Made by a program: the position numbers and the translations under genes. DNA of 64,000 nucleotides from Podarcis erhardii (lineage: Eukaryota), in assembly GCA_964252035.1 (NCBI GenBank), contig OZ176210.1; one strand, given 5' to 3'. Position 1 is the stretch's first letter, and each line of letters begins with the position of its first letter. Shown piece after piece: positions 5,656-61,157 of the stretch. The notes beneath the pieces were generated by a model, which made no database searches, was not told the origin of the DNA, and worked only from the letters and a program-made list of their open reading frames with translations.

Positions 5656-6616
5656 GGGATGCAGGTGGCGCTGTGGTCTAAACCACTGAGCCTCTTGGGC
5701 TTGCCAATCAGAAGGCTGGCGGTTGGAATCTGCACAACAAGGTGAGCTATTGCTCTGTCCCAGCTTCTGCCAACTTAGCAGTTCTAAAGCACACCAGTGC
5801 AAGTAGATAAATAGGTACCTCTGCAGTGGGAAGGGGAAACTGTGTTTCTGTGCGCTCTGGTTTCCGTCACGGTGTCCCATTGTGCCAGAAGCTACTGTTA
5901 GATCCATCATGAGACCTCCGCCAGCTTCTAATCAGATACCAGCAGCCTTCAAGCAAGCAAACTTGCCTTATTATCGCTCCCTAGCATCCCACTGCCAGAG
6001 GATTGCCTCCTTCCATTCACCAGTTTGCCTCCTCCAAGTATAAGAAACGGGCAGTGCTGAATGTCACATCCATTGCCAGGTGTGTCCCGCTGGAAACAGA
6101 AAAGGGCTTTCCCCTTGGCCTGCCTTTATATCCACTCAGTTGCCAAGTGCTTTTGTGACATCACAAGAAACCCACAGCCAATGGCAAAAGCTGGGGAGGC
6201 ATCATCTTCATTGCTTTGAGCCTCACAATGGCGGGTGGACCTATCAGTCACTGTGTGCTTGTTTATTCAGGAAGCGGGTGGAGCTCTGGTCTAAACCACT
6301 GAGCCTCTTGGGCTTCCCAATCAGAAGGTTGGCGGTTCGAATCAGTGTGACGGGGTGAGCTCGCTTTGCTCTGTCCCAGCTCCTGCCAACCTAGCAGTTT
6401 GAACGTACGCCAGTGCAAGTGGATAAAGAGGTACCACTATGGCAGGAAGGCAAATGGTGTTCCAATGCACTCTGGTTTCTGTCACAGTGTCCCAATGTGC
6501 CAAAAACAGTTTAGTCCTGCTGGCCACGTGACCTGGAAGGCTGTCCACAGACAAATGCTGGCTCCCTCGGCCTGAAAGCGAGATGAGCGCCGCAACCCCA
6601 TAGTCGCCTTGGACTT
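5656..6616 (+). mobile_element. Composite element copy A: Sauria SINE 5' part + ~375-bp cargo + second Sauria SINE (tail lost)
   Basis: SINE heads at 5656 and ~6270 (A box tggcgctgtgg, B box ggttcgaatc); cargo ~5893-6269 matches the reverse complement of 33508-33883. Confidence 0.88.
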
Positions 6617-17008: not shown

Positions 17009-17282
17009 CTGTGGCAGAGGAGGACAGAACAGGAAAAAGAAGAAGAAAAGGGCACTAAGGAAAAAAGTTCTAAGAACACGCCAAAGAAACAGTTTGCAAA
17101 GGAGGGAGAAATGAGCAGCAAACATTTAATCAAAAGAAAGTTCCTTCTTATTTCAGTTTTGAAATACAGGAAATCACACCTGTTCAAATCTTACAGCGAG
17201 AAAACCCTCTAAGGCTTCTGGTTTTTTAAAAGACAAGTTGTTATTGCTCAAGGACAAGGATGAAATACAATGAACTTCAATA

Positions 17283-17288
17283 TTTATT
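17283..17288 (-). terminator. SEMA4D: Candidate polyadenylation signal (AATAAA) of the membrane-isoform 3'UTR (~17265-18737)
   Basis: tttatt on + strand ~1450 nt past the stop and ~275 nt before the alternative exon acceptor; the cleavage site cannot be confirmed from sequence. Confidence 0.55.
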
Positions 17289-20462: not shown

Positions 20463-21380
20463 CCAGGCCTTTTTGGTGATGGCTCCCCACCTATGGAATG
20501 TTCTCCCCAGGGAAGCATGCCTGACACTATCACTGGCTACTTTTAGGCACCAGGCAAAAAACCTTTACAGTCAGGCTTTTGGTCTTTAGATAGTGTGGTC
20601 TCTTTTAGTAGACGTCAATGCCTTTTTATGTATATCACTGCTTTTAGCTTTTATTTGTTTTAACTCTGTACTGGTTTCAATTTTCGTATTCTAAGTTGCT
20701 TTTCAGCTTTCTCTTTCGTTAAAAAACTGACTAAAAGCCCAATAAATAAATAAAAAAGACCAGAATCTCTATTCAATGTATTCACACCATATTTTGTTCA
20801 TTAATATAGCAGCAATAGCAACAGCAACTCTTTGCAGAAAATGTGCTGTTACGGCAAGAAATCCCGCGTGTTGCAGCCAAACTGCTGACTGAGGTTGGTT
20901 ACAGGGAACACAGATACTCCCTCGTTTAAAACAACCGGATACTGGTCCATTTCCAGGCACAATTTAAATTGCTGTTTATGATCCTCAAAGCCATATGTGG
21001 CTTGGGCCCAGACCACCTGAAAGATCGTGTCTCCCTGTGTGAACCTGCCTGGGTGCTAAGACCCTTGGGCCTTCTCTCGGCCCCATCAGCATCACACCTA
21101 CTGGTAGCACAAGAGATAGCCTTTTCTGTGTCTCAAGGGAGGCTGGACTGTCTCTTTCTGCCAGTTTTCTTTCTGTCCTATTCAGACAGGCCTTTGGAAA
21201 GCAAGGAGCAAGTGATCAGTGGCGTGCTGTCAGCACAAACTGTTTTAACTGCTGATTCTAGCTGTGCCCTGATGTGTTTAAATTAATGTTTCTATTCTAT
21301 AATGTTTTTAAATGTAAGCCACCTTGAATCCCAACTTGGGAGAAAGGTGGCATATCAATATGTTGTTGATGATGATGATG
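20463..21380 (+). mobile_element. Two decayed L2 3' fragments (~20463-20760 and ~20961-21380)
   Basis: QAFLVMAPHLWNVLP and LKAICGLGPDHLKDRVS motifs; L2-type 3' ends. Confidence 0.65.
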
Positions 21381-21485
21381 ATATTCAAGGGTTTGAGGCA
21401 TCATCTCTGGGCATGCAAAACTTGTCATTTTGGAAGGCACACCCAAAAGTATTTTCAGTCAGAAACATTACATTAGACATTAAAA

Positions 21486-21708
21486 TGCTGGTACCTCGGT
21501 TTTCGAATGTAATCCGTTCCGGAAGACCATTCGAGTTCTGAAACGTTCGAAAACTGAAAACTCAGTACAGAAAACTCAATATGGAAGGAGTGTGGTATGT
21601 TTGACTTCTGAGGCGTGTTCGAAAACTGAAGCATTTACTTCCGGGTTTACGGCGTTCGAAAACCAAAACGTTCATCAACGGAGACGTTCGCTAACCAAGG
21701 TACCACTG
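21486..21708. mobile_element. Tc1/mariner MITE
   Basis: Left ...GGTACCTCGGTT, right AACCAAGGTACCACTG|TA. Confidence 0.8.
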
Positions 21709-22170
21709 TATTGATTTCATAAACCCCATGACAATTCAAGGGTATAAAAGACAATTTCCTCAAGTAATTACAATAACAGCTAACAGAGGGGTCACCAACA
21801 TGTGCCGACAGAGACCTTCTCTGAGTTCTGGCCCCCTGCCCCTCCGTCCCTCTGAGAGAAGCCTCCTTAAACAAACAGAAGACTTTTTTGAAGCCTAATT
21901 CGGGCATGGCATAGAGGAAAGGTTACAGCTAGGGAACAGTTGTAGCACATGTGAGGTGGCCATAGACTGAGAATTGGCCCTATTTGGGGGGGGGGGGGAG
22001 GCAAAAACAAGCCAAAAATAAAAAGATGTGGGGTTTTTTATTGTAACAAAAAACTACACATTAAATAGAAGTGTTAGATATCGCACCAAGCATTTTGTGG
22101 AGGAGCTCAGCCCAAATGTTTATTACACTTATTATTTCCCCACCTCTTTTGGAAAGAAAGAAAAGCTTAC

Positions 22171-22217
22171 CAGCAGTACAAGAAGAAGCATCGCCACTAA
22201 TATTCTGAATCCAGTCC
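22171..22217 (-). CDS. SEMA4D: SEMA4D coding exon 13 (end of PSI; branch point to the two alternative C-termini)
   Basis: 47 nt, TTTTGTAG|G GAC TGG...GCT G|GTAAG; DWIQNISGDASSCTA; phase 2 in, phase 1 out, fitting both neighbours. Confidence 0.92.
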
Positions 22218-22979
22218 CTACAAAAGTAAAGAGACAGTCAAAGAGTCAATACATTTACCATCGCCTACCCTCCCTACCCTCTGTGTGCAAATCTCTCCCC
22301 ACCTGCAAATTTGTTATCTGCCTCCCTCCAAATGCCTGGAAAGGCGGCACTGACAGGATTTGATAATATCCAAACAAGTGACGCAGGAGAGGGGGAGAGG
22401 AAGGAGCGCAGAAGCCGTCGGATCACCTTTTGCTGAAGGGCAGCATTCCACAAAGTGACAAACAGACCCTTTATTTAAATAAACAAGTTGTGTGTGTTTG
22501 CAACAGTTTGGAACACAGTTTGGGAAAGCCGCTGTTCAGGAAAAACACTTTTGGAAAAAACACTTCTCAGACATCGCAGTGATTTTGAGTCTGTTGACTC
22601 CAAATTTGTGCCGAAGCCCGGAAGCTTTCTTTACAGACCTTTAAATGGGAAAAAATCATTTAAAATATCTGCAATCTTCTAATACCAGGATATCTGGTTT
22701 TAATTGTGCCCATGGAGGTGAAAGAAAGAGCTAGAAAAAGAACAGCCCACAATTTTTTTCAGGCTAACAGCTGCTGTGGATTTGGCAGTGAAATGTTTCA
22801 TAGGGGAAGTTAGAATCACGCGTGTTATGTATTGACATCCCGATATCATGTGCGTGAGCATCGGGCTTCCCTTTCCTAAGCCACCCAGCAGCTTTCTAGA
22901 CGTTGGGAAGGAGGTGTCAGACTTTAATACTTCAATACTCCAATTAACCAGGAACATTCAGGGGACTAGCCTAGTCCCG

Positions 22980-23449
22980 TAGTAGTAGTAATATATTTCT
23001 ACCCTGCCCATCTGGCTGAGTTTCCCCAGCCACTCTGGGCGGCTCCCAACAGAATACTAAAAACACGATAAAACATCAAACTTTAAAAATTCCCCTAAAC
23101 AGGGCTGCTTTCAGAGGTCTTCTAAAAGTCAGATAGTTGTTTATTTCCCTGACATCTGATGGGAGAGTGTTCTACAGGGAGGGCGTCACCACCAAGAAGG
23201 CCCTCTGCCTGGTTCCCAGTAACCTCATTTCTCTCAGTGAGGGAACCGCCAGAAGGCCCTCAGAGCTGGACCTGGGTGTCTGGGCTGAACGATGGGGGTG
23301 GAGACGCTCCTTTAGGTATACCGGGCCGAGGCCATTTAGGGCTTTAAAGGTCAGCACCAACACTTTGAACTGTGCTCGGAAACGTACTGGGAGCCAATGA
23401 AGATCTTTCAGGACCAGTGTTACATGGTCTCAGCGACCACTTCCAGTCC
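22980..23449 (-). mobile_element. L2 LINE 3' fragment
   Basis: LTFKALNGLGPVYLKERLHPHRSAQTPRSSSEGLLAVPSLRE; (TAC)n tail. Confidence 0.87.
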
Positions 23450-23816
23450 ACTGACCGCACACCACTGGGTACAGAGGGATAACGTAGTGCTGCTGACAGC
23501 CTGACTGCTGTAATGGGAAACTGACACGTCCCACCTAATACGTAAGCTAGAGAGGAGTGGTGGAAAGCAGGCGATGATCTGACTTGCTAATACTGTGTAC
23601 TGCAGTTCTATTGGTAGGCAGCTCCTGTAGTGGCCTGGTATTCGTGCCCAGCTTCCTGAGGATGTTTAAGGAGGTTCTCTCGAGGGGAAGCCCTGGAATA
23701 ACATTATGAACAGCAGAACTGGGCCCTGAGATCATCAGTTGGGGTGCTTCCCCAAATTCCTTCTCAAACAGATACTTTTGTTCTGTTTGAGACCTCCAGG
23801 TATAGGGTGGTATATA

Positions 23817-24584
23817 CCGTATTTTTTGCTCCATAAAACACACTTTTTTTGTGTGTCTTATGAAGCGAATGCTCCGCGGCTCTCTTTAAAGCAGCAAAGC
23901 GGGACAGGAGCTGCTTACACGGGTGTAAAGCAAGCACAGCAGGAGCCGTGTAACCCTTCTGCCCCCACGCTCAGCCGCCCCACTGGGATGGGTGCGTGCA
24001 CACGCATACCACCCCCTTGGGATGATGCTCGTGTGGGCTATGTGCCGCCACACAAGACCCTCCCTCCGCCACTGGTCTTGCCAGGACAGTAGTACCTTCC
24101 TTTGCAGAAGTTTGAAATTTGAAGGGCGGCTGTGGTTTGGTCCTTGTGTTGTGTATGAAGGTATGAATTAGGTAGGTTTGACTTTAAATGGGAATTGAAT
24201 CAGATTTCTCCCTCATTCCTCCCTCATATGAAAGCCCCCAGAGCACTCTGCAATGAACAAAAAGGAGGAAAGTCCCACTTCTTTTGGCTTTATTAAAATA
24301 ATTGTGTAGGGCCAAACCATACAGTCCTTAGAACTAAGGGACTCAATGTGGGAAGCTCATATATTTCCATTGCTAGGGGGAAAAGTCTCTCTTCATTTGT
24401 AAATGACAGGGATGATGGCTCTTAATGCCACTGTTGACTGCTGTTCACTTTACATGGTTGAAATATTATTCTGATATACCGGTAGTTTATTAAATAGTTT
24501 AGTACAACATTTGATTCAAAATATTTTTTTTCTTGTTTTCCTTCTCTAAAAACTATGGAGCGAAAAATGGAGCGAAAAATAAGG
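23817..24584. mobile_element. pogo/Tigger-type non-autonomous DNA transposon
   Basis: TA|CCGTATTTTTTGCTCCATA...TATGGAGCGAAAAAT...GG|TA; the right TIR carries a short internal duplication. Confidence 0.7.
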
Positions 24585-26052
24585 TAAATTCAATAAAAAA
24601 GAATAATAAATAAAATACAGGCGGTGGTGGTGAGGGCAGGCCTTCCAGCAGTCAGCTGTGCTCCTCAGACAGGCTCACCTAGTGCCTACTTCAATGTCCT
24701 TTGGGTGCCAAATACCTTTTTCGTTTTCCCAGCCTTTGAAAAAGTGAAGCCATTGCTCTTAACAGCTATGGGCGTCCCTTTTAAAACCCGGCTGCAGACT
24801 GGAGCAAAATGGCCGCCATGCTGGTCCACGCTCCCAGTAAACCCACACTCAGCTGCCAGGCTAGAGAGTAGGGTGCCCCTATAGACAAAGGGACCGGCCG
24901 ACAAGTCTGCATTCCCACCATTTTCATCATCAGCCTCTTCCCACCGTTTCCTCTGGGGCCAGACAAAATGGGCGCTCCCATCTGGGAGAAGCTGTCATTA
25001 TCTTTGTTTTGGCTTTATGTGTGCCACCCGGAGTGTTTTTACCAAGTACAGCTTAAAAACTATGAAATAAATATATAAAAGCAACAAGAAGATGCGGTAA
25101 ACAATGATTATGAAGATAGTTATCTATTGCAATACCGGTATGCTCTGCAATGACAAAATATCTGTAACTATGGAGCTTCTGGTTGTTGTTTTAAGAACAG
25201 TAAGGTAGGTTTGCATGGTTGAAAGATGAACAGCTGGATATGCATCTAGCCAGGGGTGTTCTGACTTGGGCAATTTGTTCTTTCAGAGCCTATGTCTGTG
25301 AACTTGTTTTCTTACACTTATATTCCACCAGTCTTCCAGGCCTGCTACATTTCTTACATTTATATTCTAGGCCTGCTCAGCTTCAGCGAAGAGCCCTTCA
25401 TGGGACCATGTGTTTTTCATACGTAAAGTAAAAAAATGTGTAGGTTCTGTTCGTATACATTAATTATTATGTTGATTTTGAAAGGCAATTCAAAGTTGCA
25501 GCGTTTGGGCTGTGCATTCTCTGTGCTGCTTTTTAAGTAAAAGCCTATGCCCCCAAAAGCTTGAACTCTGCACAAATCTATTTTGCATTATTTACTCTGC
25601 CCCTCTTGATTATGCTAAGTGGCAAAGAACTCTGCACTCCATGGTTCAGTAGGAACTTTTTCAGAAATCACTTCTCCTTCTCCCTACAGATTTTTGAGAT
25701 TTCACCAAAGATTGCCCACACGCTAGAAATGTCTTGCGGTACCTGTTTACAACAAGAAAGGTGACTTGTGAAAATCCTGTGCATGTTTACTTCAATGCAA
25801 GTTCCACTGAGTTCAAATGATATTATTCCCAAGTAAACATGCATAGGCATAGAATTGCAAGAGGAACAAGGAAAGCAGCAGAGGATTCTTCTCAGGGTGC
25901 TGCATTTTGTACCAATTTCTGCTGACAATGTGCTCTTGCAATTATAGAATACAGAGGGGGGGGGGAGAGGGAGAGGGAGGGAGAGTTTTGCATTCCTTAG
26001 TTGACCCACGTAAATATATACATTCCCTCTACTTTGCAATACATCGGTGATA

Positions 26053-26300
26053 CAGTGGTACCTCTGGTTGTGAACGGGATCCGTTCCAGAGGCCCGTTCG
26101 CAACATGGAAAGGACGCAAACCACAGCGGCGCGTCTGCGCATGCGCAGGTTGCAATTTGCCACGTCTGCGCATGACGTCATTTTGTGCGTCTGCGCATGT
26201 GGCAAAACCCGGGAGTAACCCTTTCTGGTACTTCCAGGTCGCCGCGGGACGTAACCTGAAAGAACGTAACATGAAGCAGACGTAACATGAGGTGTGACTG
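26053..26300. mobile_element. Tc1/mariner MITE next to the exon 12 donor
   Basis: TA|CAGTGGTACCTCTGG...GAGGTGTGACTG|TA; inverse of 36630-36881. Confidence 0.88.
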
Positions 26301-26328
26301 TATTTAGCAAACATCTAAGTGCTTTTAC

Positions 26329-26501
26329 CTTTCGGTCTCCCTCTCTTTGAAGATACTGACACAGAGAGAGGCACGGGCATTCCAAGCACAGTACGGATCT
26401 CTTGCTAGGACGCAGTCCACACAGCTGGTGTATTTGTCACAAAACGCAACGGGAGACTGGACTACTCCAGCGTTGGACCCGGCATAGAGATATTGCTTCC
26501 C
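26329..26501 (-). CDS. SEMA4D: SEMA4D coding exon 12 (PSI domain)
   Basis: 173 nt, TTTCTGCAG|...AG|GTAAAA; [57 protein letters not shown](R). Confidence 0.96.
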
Positions 26502-26716
26502 CTGCAGAAAGAACATGGGGGGAAAGTTACAACTTTCTTTAGCATCTCGCAGGAACAGTGCCTTTGGGACAGTCCAGGACAGGTTACAAAACCCCCAGCA
26601 GAAATGACTGAATTCAACAGCTGCTTTCCCTCCACTCCACCCCAATGGCAGGGTTGGGTATTCTTGCTGTTCTGCAATCTCTCCTTCCCACAGCCCAAAT
26701 TCTTACTGAGTCCTAC

Positions 26717-26832
26717 CTTTTTCGAAGAAAGCAACAGAGTCTGAATGGGCTCAAAGTTTGGGAAGAGCTGCGTTTCTTCAATGATATGCATTCCGTTTTC
26801 GTAGCCAATGGCTTTGTGAAGGGCTCCTCGGT
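26717..26832 (-). CDS. SEMA4D: SEMA4D coding exon 11
   Basis: 116 nt, TGTTTCAG|...AAG|GTAGG; [38 protein letters not shown]. Confidence 0.97.
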
Positions 26833-28018
26833 CTGAAACAAAAGGGCCACACTTTGGTATATATAAAAATCAAAATACAAAACCAGCACACACAGACTAT
26901 AGTCTGATGTTTTCACCCCAAGGCTCCTGCTTCCTTCCCCTCATGCCTTTTATTGTGTTTTGCTACGCAGCTACCCAACCTTGAGCATTTTCATTCTCTA
27001 TCCAACTTTCATTTCATCCTTTAATTCCATTTCTTCTTCCAAACTGCAGTTGTTTCACCCTTTCTGAGCAGTTTGCTACCAGGACATGGGCTGGATTCTT
27101 ATACTTCAGCTGTAAACTTTTCTTTTTCCTTTTTGGTTAACCAAAAACCACCAACCTTTTTTAGACCAACCTTGGAATCCAGCGACATTTAAGGTACAAG
27201 CTCCCTCAGCCCCAGAGAGCATGGCAAAGAGCAAACCTAGGAGCTGTGTTCCATAAATATATGTGGACCCAAGGCTTGGGAACATTATGGACTACTCAAA
27301 GTGTAGACAAGCTAAGAGTGATGCATAAACGCTCGCCTGAGAGATGTCATACTTGGGTGAGGAAATTATCTTTCAACTTGTTCTTAAATCAACATAATGA
27401 TTTCATTACAATGCTGGTCTGATAGAGCCATTTATTTATTTTTAAAAGTACAATCCACCTTTCCTTGAAAAGAAAAATTAAGCCAACTAACAACTGGCAA
27501 TTAAACAATTCCTTTTTTTAAAAAAAGGGGGGGAAATCACAGAAACAATTACTACACAATTAAACAAAACCACATGCAAACAAAACTAAGGTAGCAACAC
27601 TAAGCATCCATCACCAAAATCTTTACTACATAAGAAGTGAGCAATTTTGAGGGAATTTCACAACAACGGTGCCATGACTGAAAAGGCCTTTTCTCTTGTA
27701 TCCAAGCTGCTGAAGCTCAGAGATCTGGGTGTAGAGGAAGGTTCATATGGGAAGAGGAAGTCATAAACGTTTTGAAGTCCTGGGCCATTTCGGAGCCTCA
27801 AAGGTTTAAAATGCAGGACTCTGATTTGCAAATATATGTGTTAGCAAACTAGTTGGCTGGAGTTCAGCCCCGATCTCACAGGCAATTTTTGCCAGTCTTA
27901 GAACCCAGGATGCTCTGAATTGCAACAAATATGCAGCTCACAAGACTAGCTCAATGAGCTGAAAAGCCACCTTATCATAGTGCAATGTTGTCCAGTTCTC
28001 AGAGTGCGGAAAACTCAC

Positions 28019-28241
28019 CTGTGCTGATGAACATGACATCATAGAAAGTGCCATTCAGGGCCTGGACTCGGTCTACCACAATCTGTGTATACTTCACATC
28101 TCTCTTCACCAGTCGGGGCCGGTCTCCAATTGGGGTCACAGAGTCATCCATCAGAGGATGGTCTTTGACAAACTGCAGGGTTTTGTCGGGTAAGTTGAGT
28201 GTAGTTGTGATATTGTCTGCTTTAGCCTCCTTGTTTATACA
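28019..28241 (-). CDS. SEMA4D: SEMA4D coding exon 10
   Basis: 223 nt, GGACAG|...G|GTGAG; [74 protein letters not shown](D). Confidence 0.97.
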
Positions 28242-28792
28242 CTGTCCCAAGAAAAATGTATGTCACATGATTAATGAGAGCTTTAAAAAGGAAGAGCAAC
28301 AGAATAAGCAAGATAGGGAAGCAGTTCTAAAACAGTTAAAGCATTGTTTAAAATAAAAACATTACAGCTGCTACCTTTTAAAATATGTATTTATTCACCG
28401 TGGGATAAGCCACATTCATATCTTTCTTTTAAGCAGAGGTGTGCTCATTCCATTGACAATCAAGAAATAAGCAAAGCATCTGCGAAGTTTGTGCAGTCTC
28501 CTTCCATGGAGGCCTCTGGTATTTGTCTCAAACATTATCTGATTGTATGAAGCAACAGCCATGTATGGCAAAAACATAACAAGGAGGTTCCCAGAAGTGG
28601 ATAAAATTGTCCTAAACCGTGCAAGTACTCTTTTGTGCAAGCTTTCACTTTATCTTAAAGTGGAAGAACATCTCTGTTCTCAGTGGCTAAAATATATCTT
28701 GATGATGGGATGCAAATATCTTTATAGGTAAATTGCATGTATTTTGTTCTTTTTGCTTGGTGCAGTTGTTTTGTGTACAGTGGTTTTGTGTA

Positions 28793-29019
28793 CAGTGGTA
28801 CCTTGGTACTCAAATGGCTTGGCTCCCGAACAGATCGGCTCCTGAACACTGCAAACCTGGAAGTGTGTTCTGGCTTGCGAACCTTTTTCAGAAGCCAAAC
28901 ATCTGATGCGGCTAAACGTCTCATGCAGCCAATCGGAAGCCGCGCCTTGGTTTACGAATGGTTTCAGGAGTCGAACAGACTCCTGGAATGGATTAAGTTC
29001 AAGAACCAAGGTACCACTG
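28793..29019. mobile_element. Tc1/mariner MITE
   Basis: TA|CAGTGGTACCTTGG...CCAAGGTACCACTG|TA. Confidence 0.92.
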
Positions 29020-29624
29020 TAGACTGCATTCAGATTTTACTATTCAGCACATTTTCTTGCTGGATTCTGAATTGCGTAAGTAGCTTCAGCCAACTGTTAC
29101 GTGTGAAGACCTCCTCACATGGTTCAAGTCACTCCTAACCATGCCTGGGACTCCCACCCCAAGGAACAATTTGCCTTGCGTGAATAGGATTGGCTCAAAA
29201 CATACGGACTATCATTTACACTGATAGCTTTGTGGGACTCATGCCATGCAAGTTGAGGTCCTGGAAGCATCCACACTGCACAGGAACATGTGAATGAGGC
29301 CGCTGGCAAGCACCCCAACACCTGCTGCTAAGGGACAGAGGAAGCTGCAAATCTAAAATAGCAACCAACTAAACTAGCCGACCCATATTCTCTATGGGTG
29401 TGTTTGCAAGGAGCTTCCTGTGGCAAACTGTAAAAGAGGAGTATGTCATGGGAGAAACCAATACCGGCATTGGGTTGTGTAGGCATCACACACCTGCTGT
29501 GCTGGTCCTCTCCATCTGCTAGGAAGGGATTAGCACAGCTTGGGGGGCCCAGAGGCATGTGGCACATGAACATTTGCTTATTATGAACAGGATCGTAACC
29601 AGTCCTCAGTTTATTCAGACTTAC

Positions 29625-29781
29625 CGCTCCAGGCCGGGGTTTAGGAATCTCTCCGTTGTATCGCAGCCATTTTGTGTGGGACTGCTCTACGGTCGCGATT
29701 TGCATGTACTTCCCTTTGGCAAAAACATCCTCCACTGTCGAGATGTTGTAGGCACAAACAGCTGATAGCCCGACGTTGTTC
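29625..29781 (-). CDS. SEMA4D: SEMA4D coding exon 9
   Basis: 157 nt, TTTTAAG|...GCG|GTAAGT; [52 protein letters not shown]. Confidence 0.97.
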
Positions 29782-29871
29782 CTTAAAACACACACCAAGG
29801 AAACCAAAATCAGCAACTTGTTTCACACTTCCTCAGAAACAAATACTTCCAAATGTTCAAGCGTTACTTAC

Positions 29872-30047
29872 AATTGTGGGGAGAAAACCCCGTAGATCAC
29901 TGGCTCCTTCGAACTTGGAGTCTTCAGGATGAAAACATCATTGACAACGTTGAAAAACAAATTTTTCTCTGGTACAGAGCAAAGCAACCTGGCCTTGAGA
30001 TAGGATGTCCATTTTTTCTGTAAAGTTCTGTGTCCACCTTGGTCCCC
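29872..30047 (-). CDS. SEMA4D: SEMA4D coding exon 8
   Basis: 176 nt, TTTTAAAG|...TT|GTAAGT; [58 protein letters not shown](L). Confidence 0.97.
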
Positions 30048-31243
30048 CTTTAAAAGAAAAATGCATTCAAAAGTAAGCCGATTCCTTTTCAAAAGTATAC
30101 AGAATTCTGCTACATTAGACTGAATAATTGCAACCAATATTTCAAGTATAGCTTATATGGACAAATTCGCCAAACAAGGTGGATTGAGATTAGCATTAAG
30201 AGGTTACTATTAGCACATATAACCTGTGAGAGATAGCTAAATTCAGTTCTACATTGTATTGTGTGTTGGCCCATCTAGTCTAGCTTCCAGTTCTTGCAGT
30301 GACCAGCCAGATGCCTTTGGGGAACCTGCAAGCAAGTCCCGAGTATAGAAGCACTGTCTGCACTTACAATACCTAGCAGCTAGCATGAAGAGGAATACTT
30401 TCTTCCACAGGTGAGGCAGAACACAGCCTTATCCTCCATGTCTAGCCCTCTTTTGAAAACATCCAAGTTGGTGGCCATCACCACCTCTTGTAGGACCAAA
30501 TCACACCCTTTAACCATGCACTGTGTGGCGAAGTCTCCACTCCCGGACATGAACTGCAGACTCTTAGGGCCTCAATACTCATGTGTCAGCTGGTTCAGCT
30601 GCAAATCAGCAGAGAGACTCCGAGATGAATGGTAAAGTTGATTCTTTTTTCCAAGGAAACATAATACAAACAAGAGAAACCTACAGTGAGACTGTCTGCA
30701 GGTAAAGCAGTTGCCAGAACTGATGATGTGGGCCTCCCACTTCCCCCTAAGTCTCTTCCCGATCCAGCTGTTTTCCTGGCAGTCTTAAACTCCGTCAGGG
30801 GACGGGACCCCTTGCATTTTTTGTTCTGCTACATGCAGAAGTCTCTAAGCCCTTGGAGACAAGGAGCTGAATACAGGACTGGCAGGCTCCCGTGAATCTG
30901 TTGCAGTCTCAACCCCACACCTCTTTCTCCGCTGCCTTGTCCTACGTCTGCAGTGCTTTCTGCCTCTCCTTCCTCTCTCTCACTCAAGCCTGTTGCTTGT
31001 TCACCATCCAACCATTCTGCCCCCCACTACAGCCTCTGATCTGTCTTCCATGTCCCACCACCACTCCTCTGGCTCTGAGCCTTCCTCCTCTGAGGTTCCT
31101 CTAGGGGGGGGGGGTTCTCCAGCTGCAGCTCCAACTATTCCTCATTGTCCGGCCAGTCCCTGACAACATGTTATATTCAAGGTCTGGGGAATGCTTCAAA
31201 ACCTATCCCAGTGAAGGGAGTATCACCGTTTTGGTTTATGGGT

Positions 31244-31600
31244 AAAGGTAAAAGGACCCCTGACCATTAAGTGTAGTCACAGACGACTCTGGGGTTGCGG
31301 CACATCATCTCACTTTACTGGCCAAGGGAGCCGGCGTTTGTCCGCAGACAGCTTCCGGGTCATGTGGCCAGCATGACTAAGCCGCTCCTGGCGAACCAGA
31401 GCAGCGCACGGAAACACTGTTTACCTTCCCGCTGGAGTGGTACCTATTTATCTACTTGCACTTTGACGTGCTTTTGAACTGCTAGGTTGGCAGGAGCAGG
31501 GACCAAGCAAAGGGTGCTCACCCTGTCGCGGGGATTCAAACCACAACCTTCTGATCGGCCAGCCCTAGCCTCTGTGGTTTAGACCACAGCACCACCTGCC
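31244..31600 (-). mobile_element. Sauria SINE
   Basis: ggtaaagg tail at left, tRNA-like head at right; TTATGGG on both sides (TSD). Confidence 0.9.
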
Positions 31601-32235
31601 TTATGGGAGGAACGCCCAAATCTACCCAATGTCAGCATTACAATGTCACCCCCAAAATAGAGCAAACGCCAGTTTGGAGACCAGCTAATGAGTGGGCTCC
31701 CTTCCACCACAGTGGAAAGAGCCATGCTTACCAATCTAAAAAAATGTAACCTTCATCCAGCAAAGAATGAATTTTAAATGCGAGCCTCTTATGGGTGAAA
31801 TATACATTAAGCATTAAAGCACCAACTGTGCTCTCCCAATTTTTGCCGTGTCTGCACTTTTCGAAAAAAGCAGATGTCTTAATATGAAATGCATTCGAGG
31901 TAAGCAAGGATTTTATTTTTCACCGAGGCGGTTTCAAAATAATGGTAGGCAATTTATTTTCCTATGTAACAAAAAATGCACATATTTTCCTCCTCCAATC
32001 TATATATAGCTCCACACAAATCGTTAAGAATGAGAACCCAGTCACTTGACTGCAATAGTGCTGGTTAAAAGCAATGACAGACAGCCAGCAGACAAGAGGA
32101 CCATCACAACCAGATTTACTTCAAGCTACTGAGATCTCATAAATCTTGCAGAGTGTATCAGGTTCTGTTGCTTAATTACATCCAATGAGTTTTTAAGCAT
32201 CTGGTTTTAAGATGCAACCTCACTGCCCCTGGAGA

Positions 32236-32286: not shown

Positions 32287-33124
32287 GGCAGACAGCATGC
32301 TCAGTAAATGTTTCTGGAAATTTTGCAAACGTTTTAGAAATTTAACCTTGTTTCACATCAAGAGGTTTCCCCCCCAAAGCCAGGCAGCTACTATTATGTT
32401 TAAAAGGCATGAGAATGACAGAATTAGGGCTGGTTGCAATCGTTTTCTTCCAGGCTATGGCAGCTAGCCACCTGTCACATCACAGTCAAGCAAGAAATTT
32501 TCTTGGTGTGAGAAAAATGTTGGCTTTGTCTGGTACCCTTTAGAAATGCGTCTGGCATAGCTCAGGCATCCGGCTTCCCTTGAAATTACGATGGCTAGAA
32601 TTCAATCGACAGCTTATGAGTGATGCGTGAAGGGAATGAAGCGGGAGAGTATAAAGAGTTCTTGGTCTCTCTTATTTTAAAACTAAGAAAATTAATTTCC
32701 ACCATCATCTAATAACGGGAGCAACTTGGTTTCCCTTACTAACACAGAATCAACCAGTTTTTGAATGCAGAATGCAATCTCGAATCCTTTTTCTTCTTCT
32801 GAAGTCTCGCTAAAGCTATGTCCACACAGAAGAATCCAACAGTCAGGGATTGGAACTACAGTGCTCTGTTGGAAGCACTGCCAAAATCTTGAGGAAGGGA
32901 AAGACTCTCCTCCATGGAAAAAGCTCTGTGACAATTTCTGTGAAATAGGCAACACCTTCAAATGTGGCCCACTTTGTCCCGAGGCAAATTCCTTCCTGGC
33001 GCCAAATATCATCGACAGAGTAAAAAAGGTAAAAGCAGAGCTTTTTTCTAGGGGGACGCATACTCCTAAACATTTTGTGAATCTAAGTTTGGCCTCATTG
33101 AGGAGCAGTATTTGAATATGAGTG

Positions 33125-34124
33125 GGAAAATGGGTAAAAGGTAAAGGACCCCTGGACGGGAAAGTCCAGTCAAAGGTGACAATGTGGTTGCAGCACTCAT
33201 CTCGCTTTTCACGCCGAAGGAGCCCACGTTTGTCCACAGACAGCTTTCCGGGTCATGTGGCTAGCAAGACTAAACTGCTTCTGGCACAACGGGACAGCGT
33301 GACGGAAGTCAGAGAGCATGGAAACACTGTTTACCTTCCTGACGCAGCGGTGCCTATTTATCTACTTGCATTGGTGTGCTTTCGAACTGCTAGGTTGGCA
33401 GGAGCTGGGACAGAGCAACGGGAGCTCACTCCATCACAGGGATTCGAACTGCCAACCTTTCAATCGGCAAGCCCAAGAGGTTCAGTGGTTTAAACCACCC
33501 GTGTCCCGAATAAACAAGCACACAATCACTGATTGGTCCACCCACCATTGTGAGGCACAAAGCAATGAAGTTGATGCCTCCCCAGTTGCCATTGGCTGTG
33601 GGTTTCTTGTGATGTCACAAAAGCACTTGGCAACTGATTGGTTATAAAGTCAGGCCAAGGGAAAAGCCCTTTTCTGTTCCCAGCAGGACACACCTGGCAA
33701 TGGATGTGACATTCAGCACTGCCCAGGTTTCTTCCACTTGGAGGAGGCAAACTGGTGAATGGAAGGAGGCAATCCTCTGGCAGTGGGATGCTAGGGAGCG
33801 ATAATAAGGCAGGTTTGCTTGCTTGAAGGCTGCTGGTATCTGTGATTAGAAGCTGGTGGACGTCTCATGATGGACCTAACAGTAGCTTCTGGCACAACAG
33901 AACACCGTGATGGAAACCAGAGCGCATGGAAACGCCGTTTACCTTCCTGCCACAGTGGTACCTATTTATCTACTTGCAATGCCATGCTTTAATACTGCTA
34001 AGTTTGGCAGAAGCTGGAACAGAGCAATAGGAGCTCACCCTGTTGTGCAGATTCCAATCGCCAACCTTCTGTTCGGCAAGCCCAAGAGGCTCAGTGGTTT
34101 AGACCACATCACCACCCGCGTCCC
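33125..34124 (-). mobile_element. Composite element copy B: Sauria SINE 5' part + cargo + complete Sauria SINE, with TSD
   Basis: ATGAGTG at 33118-33124 and 34125-34131 flanks the whole 1000-bp unit; cargo at 33508-~33883. Confidence 0.9.
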
Positions 34125-34541
34125 ATGAGTGACAGAGTAACTCCATAGCAAGGCCATGCACTGCCTGTTTACCTTTGGGCAGGGCCATAACATGTAAGGT
34201 GAGCGAGTGGGATGTCCATTGCCAATTGTGCTGCTGGAAGCAGCCTATTAAAATACACTGGGCAGACCTGAGTGATAGCTGTTGTTCAGCCAGGTATGCC
34301 TCAAAAGTATCACCCCTTAAATTGGCTGCGACTGGCCAGTTCGAATTTAATTGGTAGAGAATCCCACTGCCAGAGCAGCTAGTGATCTCTCTGTAAGCCT
34401 GGACATCTGGAAATATAGACTGCACATCTGGACTACGGTGATTGGGGGGAAACTGCTAGCACACAAAACAGTCACAACGTTGTTTGCTCTCACCCCAAAA
34501 TTATTTGGAAACAAGGGGGAAATGGTTTAGCTCATTCTCAC

Positions 34542-34693
34542 CTTACAAACTCTGGCTATCCTTGGAATCATCAGCTTGCCAAGAAATTCATATTCCACAG
34601 AAACCTCAGTGAAAAAGAAATACACTTTGTCGTCATCCTCATCAGCACTGTTTGGATCAGCTCTTATCACATCGGCAAAAATGAAATTTGGTT
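34542..34693 (-). CDS. SEMA4D: SEMA4D coding exon 7
   Basis: 152 nt, CTCTAG|...AAG|GTGAG; [50 protein letters not shown]. Confidence 0.97.
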
Positions 34694-35454
34694 CTAGAGA
34701 AGTGAAATACAAAATTGCTTAATTTTAATAATTCCCCCACCTCTCAATATTTCCTGTTAATTACTTATTGTGGACACAGTAGCTGCTCCTTAGTCCTAAT
34801 ACTATATGATAACCTAGATCTTTGCTGCAGTAAACATTACCATTTCTGTATTTCACAAACTCTTCAAGAAAATTTGTATTAAAAAAGAGCTATTTTCACA
34901 AACTAAACATAGTGACATCAAGATCCAAACACACTTTTAAACTGAGAAATCTGCTCTACAATTCCTTGAATTTTTGGTGCAAGTATTTATACAGCCACAA
35001 GAACAACAACACTGCTCTTATGGAATAATCCTTGAAGGAATCCTGTTAGTTATTACAATTCAGCACTGACTTACAGGAAGGGGTTGTTAGTCCATATTCC
35101 ATTGTCATTTCCCCCCACCCCTCATCCCCTTTTAAGAGCATCTCAAAAGTCTCCTGATAATCGAAAATCAAATAAAGGATAAACCAAACCACAACACAGT
35201 TTCTTCAAGCTGCTTTAATGGATTTCATGAACTAAACCAAAGCTGTTTACAATTTCTGTTATTTCAAGATGCGTATAGTCTCCAACCCAGACAGAAGACT
35301 GAAACAACTGTGTATTTCTTGGGGAATGGCTGTAGAAAGAGATCTTTCTGGCTTTGGAAACGTACAAAAGGGGTACTATTTCGGTAAAGAGATTACTAGA
35401 CAGTACATTTTAGGCACATTCCAACAAATGTTTATTTCCCCCTCCAGATCTTAC

Positions 35455-35649: not shown

Positions 35650-36001
35650 GGTAAAGGTAAAGCTCCCCTGACCATTAGGTCCGGTTGTGACCGACTCTGG
35701 GGTTGCGGCGCTCATCTCGCTTTACTGGCCAAGGGAGCCGGCGTACAGCTTCTGGGTCATGTGGCCAGCATGACTAAGCTGCTTCTGGCAAACCAGAGCA
35801 GCGCACGGAAACGCCGTTTACCTTCCCACCGGAGTGGTCCCTATTTATCTACTTGCACTTTGATGTGCATTCGAACTGCTAGGTTGGCAGGAACAGGGAC
35901 CGAGCTACGGGAGCTCATCCCGTTGCGGGGATTCGAACCACCGACCTTCTGATCGGCAAGTCCTAGGCTCTGTGGATTAGACCACAGCGCCACCCGCGTC
36001 C
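35650..36001 (-). mobile_element. Sauria SINE
   Basis: Full length, tail ggtaaaggtaaag, head ...gccacccgcgtcc. Confidence 0.92.
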
Positions 36002-39685: not shown

Positions 39686-40098
39686 CAGGGATGTCCAACA
39701 GGTTGATCGCGATCTACTGGTAGATCCCTGCGAGGTTTTGGTAGATCAAAGTCAATCTCCTTAGCATCAATAAAACTGACTCCTGCCCTGGCCCCTCGCC
39801 CTGCCCTCCAGTGTTATTTGATCTCTGAAAGGGAAGAAAGATCTTTCTCTGTGCTGCTGTTTTCATCCACAGCGATCTTTTTGTGAGTGACTTTACCCCT
39901 TTGTCCTTTGCCTTTAACCCCCCCCCCAAAGGTAAAAAAAGCTCAACAACTTTGAGCTGCCCCCCTAATGGGGCTTTTCTCTCCCCCCCAAAAAAAAGCT
40001 GAACTTTCGAGCTGAAACCCCCCAAAAACGCGGGTAGATCACTGCCAGTTTTTAATTCTGAAAGTAGATCGCAGTCTCTTGAGCGTTGGTCACCCCTG
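39686..40098. mobile_element. hAT MITE 2 of a tandem stack
   Basis: CAGGGATGTCCAAC...GTTGGTCACCCCTG; flanked by CTCTAAAG / CTCTAAGG. Confidence 0.88.
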
Positions 40099-40106
40099 CT
40101 CTAAGG

Positions 40107-41105
40107 CATACATGTTCAGCTGGTGGACCGTGATCGACAGGTAGATCGCCGGGGTGCTCCAGGTTGACTTTAGGATTTAAAAAAGGGATTGCCTGTGTTC
40201 TCCTGTTTGAGCGTGCATTGCCCTGGCCCCAGCACTCTGACCCATCGCTGTGGAAGCTTGCCTTCCATTATGCAGCTGCTTTGTGGATGAAGGAGTGATA
40301 ACTGCGGGTTGCTGTGATCAACTCTTGCCAATCCTTCTGAAAAGAAGCTCAACAACTCTTGCCAATCCTCCCTCCAAAAAAGCTCAACAACTCTGGTCTA
40401 TGCTCCCAAGAAAGCTTGACAACTCTTGGCAACGACGATGGGTAGATCACGGAAGACACAAGATCTACCCACCCGGGAAGAATGGCAGATGAAGGTGATG
40501 AACTTCATGGAATTGGCAGAAATGACTGGCAGAATCCGAAACCAGGGAGAAGAGTTGGTGGAAGAAGATTGGAAGAAATTTAAAGATTATCTACAGAAAT
40601 ATTGTAAAATTAAGGAATGCTAGAAAGATGTTGGAATGAAGTTACATGGGTTTAGCAGAAATGTTATAAAGAATTAAGTATAATAGATTGTAATTGGATT
40701 AAAGGAAAAAAATAATGTTAGAATTTGTTAAGTTAAATGATAGGACAGAAATTTGAGGAAGATGGAAAGGATTTGCTGAAATAATTAATCAAAGTGGAAT
40801 ACAAAAAAAGGGAGGTGTGAGGAGGTCGCTGAAACAAGTAATAGAAAGTTAATATCATTGAAAGTATTGGTTGTGTTTCTTCTTTTTAAATTGTTTTTGT
40901 TTTATTTTTGTTATGTATATGTAATATTTTTGTCTTTGTATTGTATTGTATGGTTTTGTTATGTTTAATTCTTTTTCTTTTTTCTTTCTGTAACTTTCAA
41001 AACTTTAATAAATATTACTTAAAAAAAAAAAGACAATGGGTAGATCACTGCTAGTTTTATTTTACTGGGAGTAGATCGCAGTCTCTAGAGAGTTGGACGG
41101 GCCTG
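40107..41105. mobile_element. hAT MITE 3 of a tandem stack (decayed left TIR; interrupted by L1)
   Basis: catacatgttcagc...gttggacgggcctg; body related to MITE 2 and 49871-50147; flanked by CTCTAAGG / ATCTAAAG. Confidence 0.72.
40451..41031 (+). mobile_element. L1-clade LINE 3' end
   Basis: KTQDLPTREEWQMKVMNFMELAEMTGRIRNQGEELVEEDWKKFKDYL; AATAAA + poly(A); 17-bp TSD GAC(G/A)ATGGGTAGATCAC at 40434-40450 and 41032-41048. Confidence 0.85.
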
Positions 41106-41515
41106 ATCTAAAGCAACAGCAACAAGGAGAAAAGCTAAATAAGCTCATCCATCAATGAACTGCTGCTTCCCATCATCTGTAACTTCAAATATGTTGCAGC
41201 ACAAAGCCAAGGCTGCTTGCAGTTATGGGAGAGGTTGGCTCTTTTTCATACTTGGTACTGCTGCATTTGAAGAAGGGAAGAAAGCAGCACTACCGTGCGG
41301 CAAACAATCAGCTCTACATTTTTTATCACGCATGTACACACAACCGTTCAGCATCATGACTTACAGGAACTAACACAGCAAAAGAGACACATTAACTCTC
41401 CTGAAGGTTTAATTAAAGGGGCATGGAAAATTAATCACTTCTGCAATACTACGAGGGGAAAAAAACTTTCTTGAAAGTCAAGCTGATAAAGAGACAAGCC
41501 GCAAACTCTTCTCAC

Positions 41516-44835: not shown

Positions 44836-45648
44836 GCTTCTGATCCGTTGGGTTGGTGTATAAAGCTGCAGAAATAAAAGGCAGAAGGAAGGAAGTTGTC
44901 AGATTTTCACAGTAGCTAATGATTTCCAAGCTAGACTCTTTCCTTTGTTAAGAAACGTCCCCACAGCAAAGACTCTGGTTTTATAAAAGGAAACAGTGGC
45001 TCATTTTCAGAAATAGCCACAGGAAGCTATTAACAACCATAATTTTCCATGAGCTCTCATGATTTATATCTGTCATATCAATACTTGTAGACAAGCATTT
45101 TGGGGATATGGAAGGGAGATGTTGCATTTTCGAAGCTCAAGGTGTAGTTTAAATATTTTAACAAAAGACTAAAATGGAACTATATATTGCGGGCAGAGGT
45201 TTTGGCTGCAGGTAGCTCGAGACGTTTCTGTGCAACCCATGGGCTTTCTGTAGGAGTTGTATGAATCCCAGGATTTTGCTTCCAAACTATGAAGCATTCA
45301 GAGTCTTAGATTCCCAATTTCAGATACCATCTGGGGGAGAATCTTGAAGATCATGAAGTGAGCTTTGTGGCTAAAGTGAGAATTTGAACTGTGGCTCCCA
45401 TCTCTTCTAAAAAGAAAGGCAACTCTGAAAATTAATTGCCAAATGCGCTATAATCTACTGAATTCAATTTTTTGGTATATTTCACCGAATTAGCAAATTC
45501 AGTATATGACTCTAGACAGCTCTATGCATTTAGCTGAATGTTTTGCACACCCATTCTGTGCAGAAAATGGTACGGAACAGGCTTATGTTTGAATGCAGGC
45601 AAAACTGTCCCTATTTTCTAATTATTTCAACCAAGTACCTTTCAGTGG

Positions 45649-46171
45649 GAGGAAAGCAATGACAAACCTAGACAGCATCTTAAAAAGTAGAGACATCACC
45701 TTGCTAACAAAGGTCCGTATAGTAAAAGCTATGGTTTTCCCAGTAGTGATGTATGGAAGTGAGAGCTGGACCATAAAGAAGGCAGATCGCCGAAGAATTG
45801 ATGCTTTTGAATTATGGTGCTGGAGGAGACTCTTGAGAGTCCCATGGACTGCAAGAAGAACAAACCGATCCTTTCTTAAGGAAATCAGCCCTGAGTGCTC
45901 ACTGGAAGGACAGATCGTGAAGCTGAGGCTCCAAGACTTTGGCCACCTCATGAGAAGAGAAGACTCCCTGGAAAAGACCCTGATGTTGGGAAAGATGGAG
46001 GGCACAAGGAGAAGGGGACGACAGAGGACGAGATGGTTGGATAGTGTCTTCGAAGCTACAAACATGAGTCTGACCAAACTGCGGGAGGCAGTGGAAGACA
46101 GAAGTGCCTGGCGTGCTCTGGTCCATGGGGTCACGAAGAGTCGGACACGACTAAACGACTAAACAACAACA
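45649..46171 (+). mobile_element. BovB (RTE) LINE, 5'-truncated, young
   Basis: RKAMTNLDSILKSRDITLLTKVRIVKAMVFPVVMYGSESWTIKKADRRRIDAFELWCWRRLLRVPWTARR...; (CAA)n tail; 12-bp TSD ACCTTTCAGTGG at 45637-45648 and 46172-46183. Confidence 0.96.
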
Positions 46172-50147: not shown

Positions 50148-50151
50148 CCCT

Positions 50152-61110: not shown

Positions 61111-61157
61111 CTAGGCGACGTTTCGACGAGGTCTCACTCGTCATCTTCAGGCTGGTG
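61111..61157 (-). ncRNA. Minimal type I hammerhead ribozyme-like motif in the PLE 3' end
   Basis: Minus strand: CCAGC-CUGAAGA-U-GACGAG(UGAGAC)CUCGUC-GAAA-CGUC^GCCUAG; conserved core boxes, perfect 6-bp stem II, palindromic ACGU replacing stem III; stem I is weak. Confidence 0.72.

What the first reader, a model, noticed from the sequence alone, without database searches (positions are those of the whole stretch)
33118..34131. SINE-cargo-SINE composite that moves as one ~1 kb unit (second copy at 5656-6616)
Seen: the same three-part structure occurs twice, 27 kb apart and in opposite orientations. It is a Sauria SINE 5' ~240 bp, ~375 bp of non-SINE sequence, then a second Sauria SINE. The junctions are the same, and the cargo looks about 90% or more identical by eye. 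Copy B has a complete tail, and one 7-bp duplication (ATGAGTG) flanks the whole 1000 bp. Established: Sauria SINEs are Pol III-transcribed and mobilised through a BovB-like 3' tail; a young BovB is present at 45649. Inference: this is a dimeric SINE family that transposes a captured sequence, using the first SINE's promoter and the second SINE's tail. Two copies in 64 kb suggest a high copy number. I do not recall a description of it.
Basis: partly seen in the sequence, partly recalled or inferred. Interest (0 to 1): 0.72.

Follow-up and report, generated by a model that had tools for sequence, protein, structure and literature searches.

The report
Two-SINE composite retroposon with cargo
Two 1-kb copies of a lizard mobile element built from a truncated SINE, 377 bp of unrelated DNA and a complete SINE are real, one was clearly inserted as a single piece, and read data suggest on the order of a hundred copies per genome, so it is a modest new variant of known composite retroposons.

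Summary
Copy B is 33125-34124, with its SINEs on the minus strand. Copy A is 5656-~6610 on the plus strand. Both have the same three parts and the same two junctions: a Sauria/Squam1 SINE head of about 240 bp, 377 bp of non-SINE cargo, then a full SINE starting at its own first base. Their flanks are unrelated.

Copy B went in as one unit. An exact 7-bp duplication (ATGAGTG) brackets the whole 1000 bp. It is nested inside the 10-bp duplication of an older, unrelated retroposon.

Summed contig depth over the cargo is roughly 50-300 times the single-copy flank in three related species. So the cargo is mid-repetitive, not high-copy; the SINE itself reaches 10^4-10^5. Copy B's orthologous junction is present in two other species, so the insertion is old.

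Not shown:
- that most cargo copies carry both SINE arms;
- that transcription starts from the left SINE, whose B box carries a C-to-G change at a conserved position and whose cargo contains a T4 run;
- where the cargo came from;
- whether the unit is absent from Repbase or Dfam.

A rival model, repeated template-switch chimeras, is not excluded. I class this as a new variant of a known kind, of moderate interest.

The parts
34125..34131 (.). Copy B target-site duplication, the copy next to the L head (ATGAGTG).
   Evidence: Exact 7-mer also at 33118-33124. It abuts the first base of the SINE head.
33885..34124 (-). Copy B, module L: Sauria/Squam1 SINE positions 1 to about 240, cut off at CCAGAAGC.
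   Evidence: Aligned with five free SINEs of the window and with R. Junction located.
34049..34059 (-). B box of L in copy B, reading GATTGGAATCT. G replaces the conserved C.
   Evidence: The same change is in copy A at 5721-5731. No other hit in the window.
33508..33884 (-). Copy B cargo: 377 bp of non-SINE, non-coding DNA.
   Evidence: Only two copies in the window. No similarity to SINE, BovB or X. No Rfam or Pfam match. Summed contig depth 16,000-31,000 against about 90-108 in the unique flank.
33619..33622 (-). T4 run in the sense strand of the cargo, shared with copy A (6151-6154). It is a potential Pol III stop.
33125..33507 (-). Copy B, module R: a full-length SINE from its own first base to the CCTTTACCTTTTACC-type tail.
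   Evidence: B box AGTTCGAATCC at 33440-33450 (read).
33118..33124 (.). Copy B target-site duplication, the copy next to the R tail (ATGAGTG).
33024..33117 (-). Older unrelated retroposon fragment X with an ACCTTT-like tail. Copy B inserted into its 5' end.
   Evidence: Outer 10-bp duplication GACAGAGTAA at 33014-33023 and 34131-34140. Summed depth about 8x10^5. No similarity to SINE or BovB.
5656..5892 (+). Copy A, module L (SINE head, 237 bp).
5893..6268 (+). Copy A cargo (376 bp).
   Evidence: 95.2% identical to copy B's cargo. Same junctions.
6269..6610 (+). Copy A, module R: SINE from its first base. The tail is missing or unrecognisable and no target-site duplication was found.
   Evidence: B box GGTTCGAATCA at 6334-6344.
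45649..46171 (+). 5'-truncated BovB LINE 3' end, an example of the presumed mobilising partner.
   Evidence: Sequence read. (CAA)n tail. 12-bp duplication ACCTTTCAGTGG at 45637-45648 and 46172-46183. Its 3' region aligns with the SINE's LINE-derived region.

Best explanation
This is an old, middle-repetitive, non-autonomous composite retroposon. Its RNA begins at the first base of a 3'-truncated Sauria/Squam1 SINE (L). It runs through 377 nt of unrelated sequence and ends in the BovB-related 3' region and ACCTTT-type tail of a complete Sauria/Squam1 SINE (R).

A BovB (RTE-clade) reverse transcriptase recognises R's 3' end and copies the whole roughly 1-kb RNA into a nicked target. This leaves one target-site duplication around the unit.

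Shown: the shared architecture, the insertion of copy B as one unit, the repetition of the cargo in several species, and the age.

Inferred: BovB as the driver, a single master lineage, and Pol III initiation in L. The Pol III step is probably inefficient, which would fit about 10^2 copies against about 10^5 for the parent SINE.

The founding locus was probably a full SINE sitting 377 bp downstream of a damaged SINE, or a one-off chimera.
For: - The architecture and both internal junctions are identical in two copies with unrelated flanks.
- Copy B is bracketed by an exact 7-bp duplication that abuts the first base of L and follows the tail of R. It is nested in the 10-bp duplication of an older element X. 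This order of events can only arise if the 1-kb unit entered in a single step.
- L and R are the same SINE subfamily. They share the ACTGAGCCTCTTGGG variant and a 17-bp segment that the five free SINEs of the window lack.
- L_A and L_B share 6 derived sites, including the B-box change. So L plus cargo descend from one ancestor.
- R carries the LINE-derived block that aligns to the BovB 3' end in this window, and an ACCTTT-type tail. Nakatsuka and Ohshima 2026 (PMC13295347) describe this tail for BovB-dependent Sauria SINEs.
- Summed contig depth over the cargo is 13,000-31,000 against 60-108 in the unique flanks in three species. Two extra paralogous cargo contigs about 10% diverged are listed.
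- Contigs from two other species, 1.4% and 7.4% diverged in the flank, bridge the L-head/flank junction of copy B.
Against: - Only two copies could be inspected. The read tool returned contigs, not reads, so depth is a rough proxy, and the arms of the other cargo copies were not seen.
- L's B box has a C-to-G change at a position that, from my knowledge of tRNA-gene promoters, matters for TFIIIC binding.
- A T4 run sits in the cargo.
- Copy A has no duplication and no recognisable tail.
- R differs more between the copies than L does: 81.1% against 87.3% identity, and 30 against 17 private changes on the same 228 sites, p about 0.08. A simple master-gene model does not predict this.
- Two copies in one 64-kb window is unexpected for about 100-300 copies in about 1.5 Gb: about 0.01 copies are expected per window.
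- No RNA evidence.
Confidence: 0.58

Rival explanations
1. Recurrent template-switch chimeras. A tail-less RNA 'L-cargo' (about 617 nt, ending at ...TTGTTTATTC) cannot be reverse-transcribed on its own. BovB reverse transcriptase starts on an ordinary Sauria SINE RNA, reaches its 5' end and jumps to the 3' end of the L-cargo RNA. Each insertion is then L-cargo joined to a different R. The junctions are identical because they are RNA ends.
For: - R always starts at its own first base.
- R_A is no closer to R_B (80.5%) than either is to L (80-82%), while L_A and L_B are 87.3% identical.
- R_A and R_B share only 2 derived sites against 6 for the L pair. The R modules carry more private changes.
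- After removing CpG-type changes, divergence is 11.1% in R, 5.9% in L and 4.0% in the cargo.
- Template switching onto small RNAs is documented for several LINE clades, and for a lizard SINE, in PMC4476161.
- Unchecked notes of this scan report other Sauria-SINE chimeras in this genome.
Against: - The R excess is weak statistically, p about 0.08 on shared sites.
- A fresh R in a single master would also lack shared derived sites.
- About 10^2 events with one dedicated partner RNA would be unusual.
- The L-cargo RNA would still have to pass the internal T4 run.
- Only two copies were seen.
Confidence: 0.2
2. The cargo belongs mainly to some other repeat family of about 10^2 copies. The SINE-cargo-SINE arrangement is rare, perhaps only a few copies. 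Copy A would then be either the source locus or a DNA-level (repair-mediated) copy made nearby.
For: - The arms of the other cargo copies were not observed.
- The two copies lie only 27 kb apart, and copy A lacks a duplication and a tail.
- An unchecked note of this scan (s1-263199) describes repair-mediated copying of a SINE plus adjacent DNA from 18 kb away in this genome.
Against: - Depth is even across the whole 377 bp and drops to single copy nowhere inside it.
- Copy B has a clean duplication around the entire unit.
- The tail regions of A and B differ, so B is not a transcript copy of present-day A.
- A and B differ by 5-19% depending on the part, which is not the uniform figure expected of a recent local copy.
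Confidence: 0.14
3. Segmental or tandem-inverted duplication of a locus where two SINEs happened to flank 377 bp of unique DNA.
For: The two copies share a chromosome region and lie in inverted orientation.
Against: - Similarity ends exactly at the first base of L, and the flanks do not align.
- Copy B has its own 7-bp duplication, nested in an older insertion.
- The cargo is multi-copy genome-wide in three species.
Confidence: 0.03

Closest known systems
Sauria / Squam1 SINE (Piskurek 2006; Kosushkin 2006), the BovB-dependent tRNA-derived SINE of squamates
   Same: Both SINE modules are this family: the tRNA-related head, the body, the BovB-derived 3' block and the ACCTTT-type tail (PMC13295347, PMC10702118).
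   Different: The mobile unit is 1 kb, not about 350 bp. It contains two SINE modules, one of them truncated, plus 377 bp of foreign DNA.
Dimeric and complex SINEs (Alu, B1-dID, Dip/B1 multimers)
   Same: In both, a left monomer would provide the start and a right monomer the 3' end, and the unit amplifies as a whole.
   Different: The monomers here are not adjacent; a 377-bp unrelated spacer separates them. The left one is truncated and has a damaged B box. Vassetzky et al. [quoted passage not shown]
SVA / LAVA / PVA composite non-autonomous retrotransposons of hominoids, including SVA_F1, which carries a captured MAST2 fragment (papers listed; details from my own knowledge)
   Same: They are composites of SINE pieces and unrelated sequence. 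A LINE moves them in trans as one unit with one duplication. Copy numbers are 10^2-10^3, and they can carry captured gene-derived sequence.
   Different: SVA is a Pol II, polyadenylated, L1-driven element with a VNTR. This unit has a tRNA-type SINE head, no VNTR, no poly(A), and an RTE/BovB-type tail.
U6/L1-type chimeric retrocopies made by template switching (PMC4476161)
   Same: A small RNA is joined by its 3' end to the 5' side of a LINE- or SINE-primed cDNA, inside one duplication. This has been reported for lizard LINEs and AnolisSINE2.
   Different: Those are independent one-off events with variable partners. Here the 5' partner is itself a SINE-headed 617-nt sequence, and the structure is repeated about 10^2 times.

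Membership tests
Sauria/Squam1 SINE (for modules L and R) | tRNA-related head with A and B boxes | tested here: met
   The heads align to five free SINEs. R_A has GGTTCGAATCA and R_B has AGTTCGAATCC. L has the head, but its B box is changed to G[G/A]TTGGAATCT. ARAGORN and Rfam call no tRNA, as expected for a derived head.
Sauria/Squam1 SINE (for modules L and R) | BovB-derived 3' region and (ACCTTT)n-type tail | tested here: met
   Met for R of copy B (tail type as in PMC13295347). Not met for R of copy A, whose tail is lost. Not applicable to L, which is truncated.
Dimeric SINE | Two SINE monomers joined directly or by a short linker | tested here: not met
   A 377-bp non-SINE spacer with no similarity to the SINE separates them. 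L is only positions 1 to about 240.
Dimeric SINE | Transcribed as one Pol III unit from the left monomer | not testable with these tools
   Both copies start at L's first base. Against that, L's B box is altered and a T4 run lies in the cargo. Only contigs were available, with no raw RNA reads.
Composite non-autonomous retrotransposon (SVA-like in logic) | Unrelated modules that insert together inside one target-site duplication | tested here: met
   Copy B has ATGAGTG at 33118-33124 and 34125-34131, nested in the outer GACAGAGTAA pair. Copy A has no duplication.
Composite non-autonomous retrotransposon (SVA-like in logic) | Many dispersed copies with the same architecture | tested here: inconclusive
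   Cargo depth is about 50-300 times the single-copy level in three species, and two further paralogous contigs were listed. Their SINE arms could not be seen.
Composite non-autonomous retrotransposon (SVA itself) | VNTR, Alu-like and SINE-R parts, poly(A), L1-type target site | tested here: not met
   None of these is present in the sequence.
Template-switch chimeric retrocopy | The 3' partner varies from copy to copy while the 5' partner is constant | tested here: inconclusive
   R is more divergent than L between the two copies, but only at p about 0.08. A decision needs many copies.
Segmental duplication | Homology continues into the flanks | tested here: not met
   The flanks do not align. 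The flank blastn finds only self hits.

The most novel reading that the evidence does not exclude
BovB has a dedicated hitch-hiker. A tail-less, SINE-headed 617-nt RNA (L-cargo) is copied into the genome again and again by template switching from the 5' end of ordinary Squam1 SINE RNAs. This gives about 10^2 L-cargo-R chimeras, each with a different R. It would be a U6/L1-like pathway turned into a family-forming mechanism in an RTE-clade system.
Probability: 0.2. Interest if true: 0.65.

Novelty: new variant of a known kind. Interest (0 to 1): 0.42.

Why it matters
If a genome-wide census confirms it, this would be the first composite, dimer-like family built on the Sauria/Squam1 SINE. It would also be an example of an RTE-clade (BovB) machinery moving a 1-kb non-autonomous RNA that carries foreign sequence. 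Composite elements of this kind are so far best known from L1-driven SVA and LAVA in apes. A specialist survey of 56 squamate genomes reported no true dimeric Squam SINEs (PMC10702118).

It would also offer two practical things. The units would be long, low-homoplasy insertion markers for lizard phylogeny. The family would also be a natural test of whether such units arise from a master gene or from repeated template switching.

The biological impact is otherwise modest. The family looks old, at least about 25-30 My for copy B by a rough clock. The cargo's promoter-like motifs are not conserved between the two copies.

Tried and rejected
- Rfam scan of 32900-34400 at E<=1: no match.
- ARAGORN on the whole window: no tRNA call.
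- Pfam on the cargo ORFs: nothing credible. The longest ORF is broken by indels between the copies, so the cargo is taken as non-coding.
- Protein word search with the 74-aa cargo ORF, tried as a way to reach other copies through called ORFs: no candidates.
- Exact 22-mer of the cargo against JGI metagenome contigs: none.
- Scan's own index by sequence: blank.
- Local alignment of the cargo in both orientations against five SINEs, with shuffles: not significant. So the cargo is not a decayed SINE body.
- An LTR, MITE or simple-insertion reading of the cargo is rejected. R is complete from its first base, rather than continuing where L stops.
- A promoter-capture reading is left as speculation. 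Copy B has three CCAAT boxes plus TATAAA on the antisense strand, but copy A keeps only one CCAAT.
- Search for a target-site duplication for copy A: nothing of 7 bp or more.
- A single-event reading of 'composite plus X' is rejected because it leaves the inner 7-bp repeat unexplained.
- All sequencing runs offered were Logan contigs. True read depth, RNA ends and strandedness could not be obtained.

Full report
**What is there.**
I read both stretches and aligned them. The two copies are 86% identical over about 960 bp and lie in opposite orientation.

Aligned against five free SINEs of the window, the SINE sense strand is the minus strand for copy B and the plus strand for copy A. In that sense each copy has three parts:
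- **L:** a Sauria/Squam1 SINE from its first base to about position 240. It ends at CCAGAAGC.
- **Cargo:** 377 bp in B and 376 bp in A.
- **R:** a SINE that starts again at its own first base.

In copy B, R runs through the BovB-related block into a CCTTTACCTTTTACC-type tail.

Exact coordinates:
- Copy B: L 33885-34124, cargo 33508-33884, R 33125-33507.
- Copy A: L 5656-5892, cargo 5893-6268, R 6269-~6610.

Both internal junctions are letter-identical in the two copies. The cargo occurs nowhere else in the window.

**Was it inserted as a unit?**
For copy B, yes. ATGAGTG lies at 33118-33124, just beyond R's tail, and at 34125-34131, touching L's first base.

Immediately outside is a second, longer direct repeat. 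GACAGAGTAA lies at 33014-23 and at 34131-40, sharing one G with the inner repeat. Between the left outer repeat and the left inner repeat lie about 100 bp (33024-33117) of another element, X. X has an ACCTTT-like tail and, by depth, about 10^4 genomic copies.

The only order of events that yields both repeats is this:
- X inserted first and made the 10-bp duplication.
- The whole L-cargo-R unit then inserted into X's extreme 5' end and made the 7-bp duplication.

Two independent SINE insertions, or a segmental duplication, cannot produce this pattern.

Copy A has no duplication of 7 bp or more. Its tail is lost after about 6610, so it says nothing either way.

**Is it a family?**
The only read resource was Logan contigs, with no raw reads. 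Depth there is summed k-mer depth of all contigs at least 80% alike, so it is only a rough proxy.

- In the same-species run X1 the unique flanks sit at 89-108. The five cargo bins sit at 16,000-31,000.
- At position 33584 the total is about 12,500.
- The SINE bins reach 10^6 to 3x10^7.
- Two other species give the same picture: X4, with flanks 1.4-3% diverged, and X12, with flanks about 5-9% diverged.

I read this as about 50-300 cargo copy-equivalents per genome, spread evenly along the 377 bp. That compares with 10^4-10^5 for the SINE. Published Squam1 counts in lacertids are 65,000-131,000 (PMC10670947).

Two listed contigs from X1 (33606-33797 and 33646-33821) are about 10% diverged and of single-copy depth. 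They are further paralogues.

What I could not see is whether those other copies carry L and R. The tool showed only the longest pieces.

**Age.**
A contig from X4 (34095-34650, 8 differences) spans copy B's L-head/flank junction. So does one from X15 (34097-34514, 31 differences in 418 nt). A third, 346-nt X15 contig spans the cargo/L junction at 5.8% divergence. So insertion B predates those species splits.

The clock used in PMC13295347 is 0.0013 substitutions per site per My. With it, 7.4% divergence is roughly 28 My. This is an inference and only rough.

**How it probably works.**
R carries what a BovB-dependent SINE needs at its 3' end. The block AGAGTCGG.CACGAC in the free SINEs aligns to the 3' end of the BovB fragment at 45649-46171. 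R of copy B keeps a diverged form of the block and the ACCTTT-type tail. Nakatsuka and Ohshima 2026 describe exactly this tail for Sauria SINEs, and (CAA)n for BovB.

Both copies begin at the SINE's first base. This is what an internal Pol III promoter in L would give. I therefore favour one RNA that runs from L's first base to R's tail and is reverse-transcribed by BovB at the target.

The weak points are three:
- L's B box reads G[G/A]TTGGAATCT in both copies. These are the only two such sites in the window. The change is C to G at the position equivalent to tRNA C56. From my own knowledge of tRNA-gene promoters, this position matters for TFIIIC binding.
- The cargo has a sense-strand T4 run shared by both copies, at B 33619-22 and A 6151-54.
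- There is no RNA evidence. Run X15 behaves like RNA-seq. Its depth jumps from about 5 to 122-141 at 34532, where a Sema-domain exon lies on the minus strand. Its cargo depth (5.3) equals the intron background. So there is no sign of separate cargo transcripts, although a poly(A) library would miss Pol III RNA anyway.

An inefficient promoter and a leaky stop would fit a family about a thousand times rarer than its parent SINE.

**An unresolved wrinkle.**
The three parts differ unequally between the copies.

| Part | Identity | Divergence after removing CpG-type transitions |
|---|---|---|
| Cargo | 95.2% | 4.0% |
| L | 87.3% | 5.9% |
| R | 81.1% | 11.1% |

L and R have the same composition, so CpG decay does not explain why R diverges more than L.

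Over the 228 sites shared by all four SINE heads:
- L_A and L_B share 6 derived states. R_A and R_B share only 2.
- R_A is no closer to R_B (80.5%) than to either L (80-82%).
- Private changes number 17 in the two L modules and 30 in the two R modules, p about 0.08.

One reading is a single master whose R was a fresh copy, plus later gene conversion or noise.

The other reading is a U6/L1-like pathway. Reverse transcription starts on any Squam1 RNA and jumps from its 5' end onto a tail-less L-cargo RNA. Each copy then has its own R, and the junctions are fixed because they are RNA ends.

Template switching is documented for several LINE clades and for a lizard SINE (PMC4476161). Unchecked notes of this scan list other Sauria-SINE chimeras in this genome. 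Two copies cannot decide this. A tree of R modules from all copies would.

**What the cargo is.**
This is unknown.
- It has no Rfam match.
- It has no credible protein domain, and its ORFs are broken between the copies.
- It has no relatives in the window.
- On the strand antisense to the SINEs, copy B shows three CTGATTGG (CCAAT) boxes and a TATAAA. Copy A keeps only one CCAAT. I treat 'captured promoter' as speculation.

**Clustering.**
With about 100-300 copies in about 1.5 Gb (contig letters), a 64-kb window should hold about 0.004-0.013 copies. Two in one window is unlikely, about 10^-5 to 10^-4 per window.

Regional preference, an underestimated copy number, or a local DNA-level origin of copy A remain possible. 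An unchecked note (s1-263199) reports repair-mediated copying between sister SINEs 18 kb apart in this genome.

**Comparison and novelty.**
- The modules are ordinary Sauria/Squam1 SINEs.
- The unit fails the definition of a dimeric SINE, because of the 377-bp foreign spacer and the truncated left arm.
- In logic it resembles SVA/LAVA-type composites, but it shares none of their parts or their L1/poly(A) biology.

[quoted passage not shown] My literature searches found no description of such a composite. I could not query Repbase, Dfam or any lizard assembly, so 'undescribed' is not established.

**Verdict.**
This is a new variant of a known kind, of moderate interest.

The scan did not report this unit before on other DNA.

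Noticed in passing
window 33014-33124: About 100 bp of an unidentified high-copy repeat (X). Summed depth is about 8x10^5 against about 90 for unique DNA. It has an ACCTTT-like tail and its own 10-bp duplication, GACAGAGTAA, at 33014-23 and 34131-40. It is not similar to the Sauria SINE or to the BovB 3' end. It may be the 3' end of another BovB-dependent SINE.
   Followed up: partly
window 45637-46183: A 5'-truncated BovB 3' end (45649-46171) with a (CAA)n tail and a perfect 12-bp duplication, ACCTTTCAGTGG. The duplication starts with A preceded by T, and TTT lies 11-13 nt upstream. This matches the 'Tn-TA' signature described in PMC13295347.
   Followed up: partly
window 34527-34712 (minus strand): An ORF with semaphorin Sema-domain motifs ([10 protein letters not shown]..., ARVCK). 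The RNA-like run X15 rises from depth about 5 to 122-141 at 34532. So copy B sits about 400 bp from an exon of the SEMA4D-like gene, in the same orientation as the gene. Copy A is antisense to it.
   Followed up: partly
window 12623-12975, 31238-31603, 35653-36001, 50746-51069, 54796-55090: The free Sauria SINEs of the window belong to another subfamily than the composite's arms. They have CAGAGC--CTAGG in place of CTGAGCCTCTTGGG. They lack a 17-bp segment. Their LINE-derived block is closer to BovB.
   Followed up: partly
window 61147-62270 and 62877-64000: A perfect 1124-bp inverted repeat (100% complementary, 606-bp spacer) running to the end of the window. It lies in the region another note assigns to a Penelope-like element. 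It could be a head-to-head pair or an assembly effect.
   Followed up: no
window 40049-40108, 41032-41115, 50074-50157, 52921-53004: Four copies of another short dispersed repeat, 70-89% alike. Not identified.
   Followed up: no
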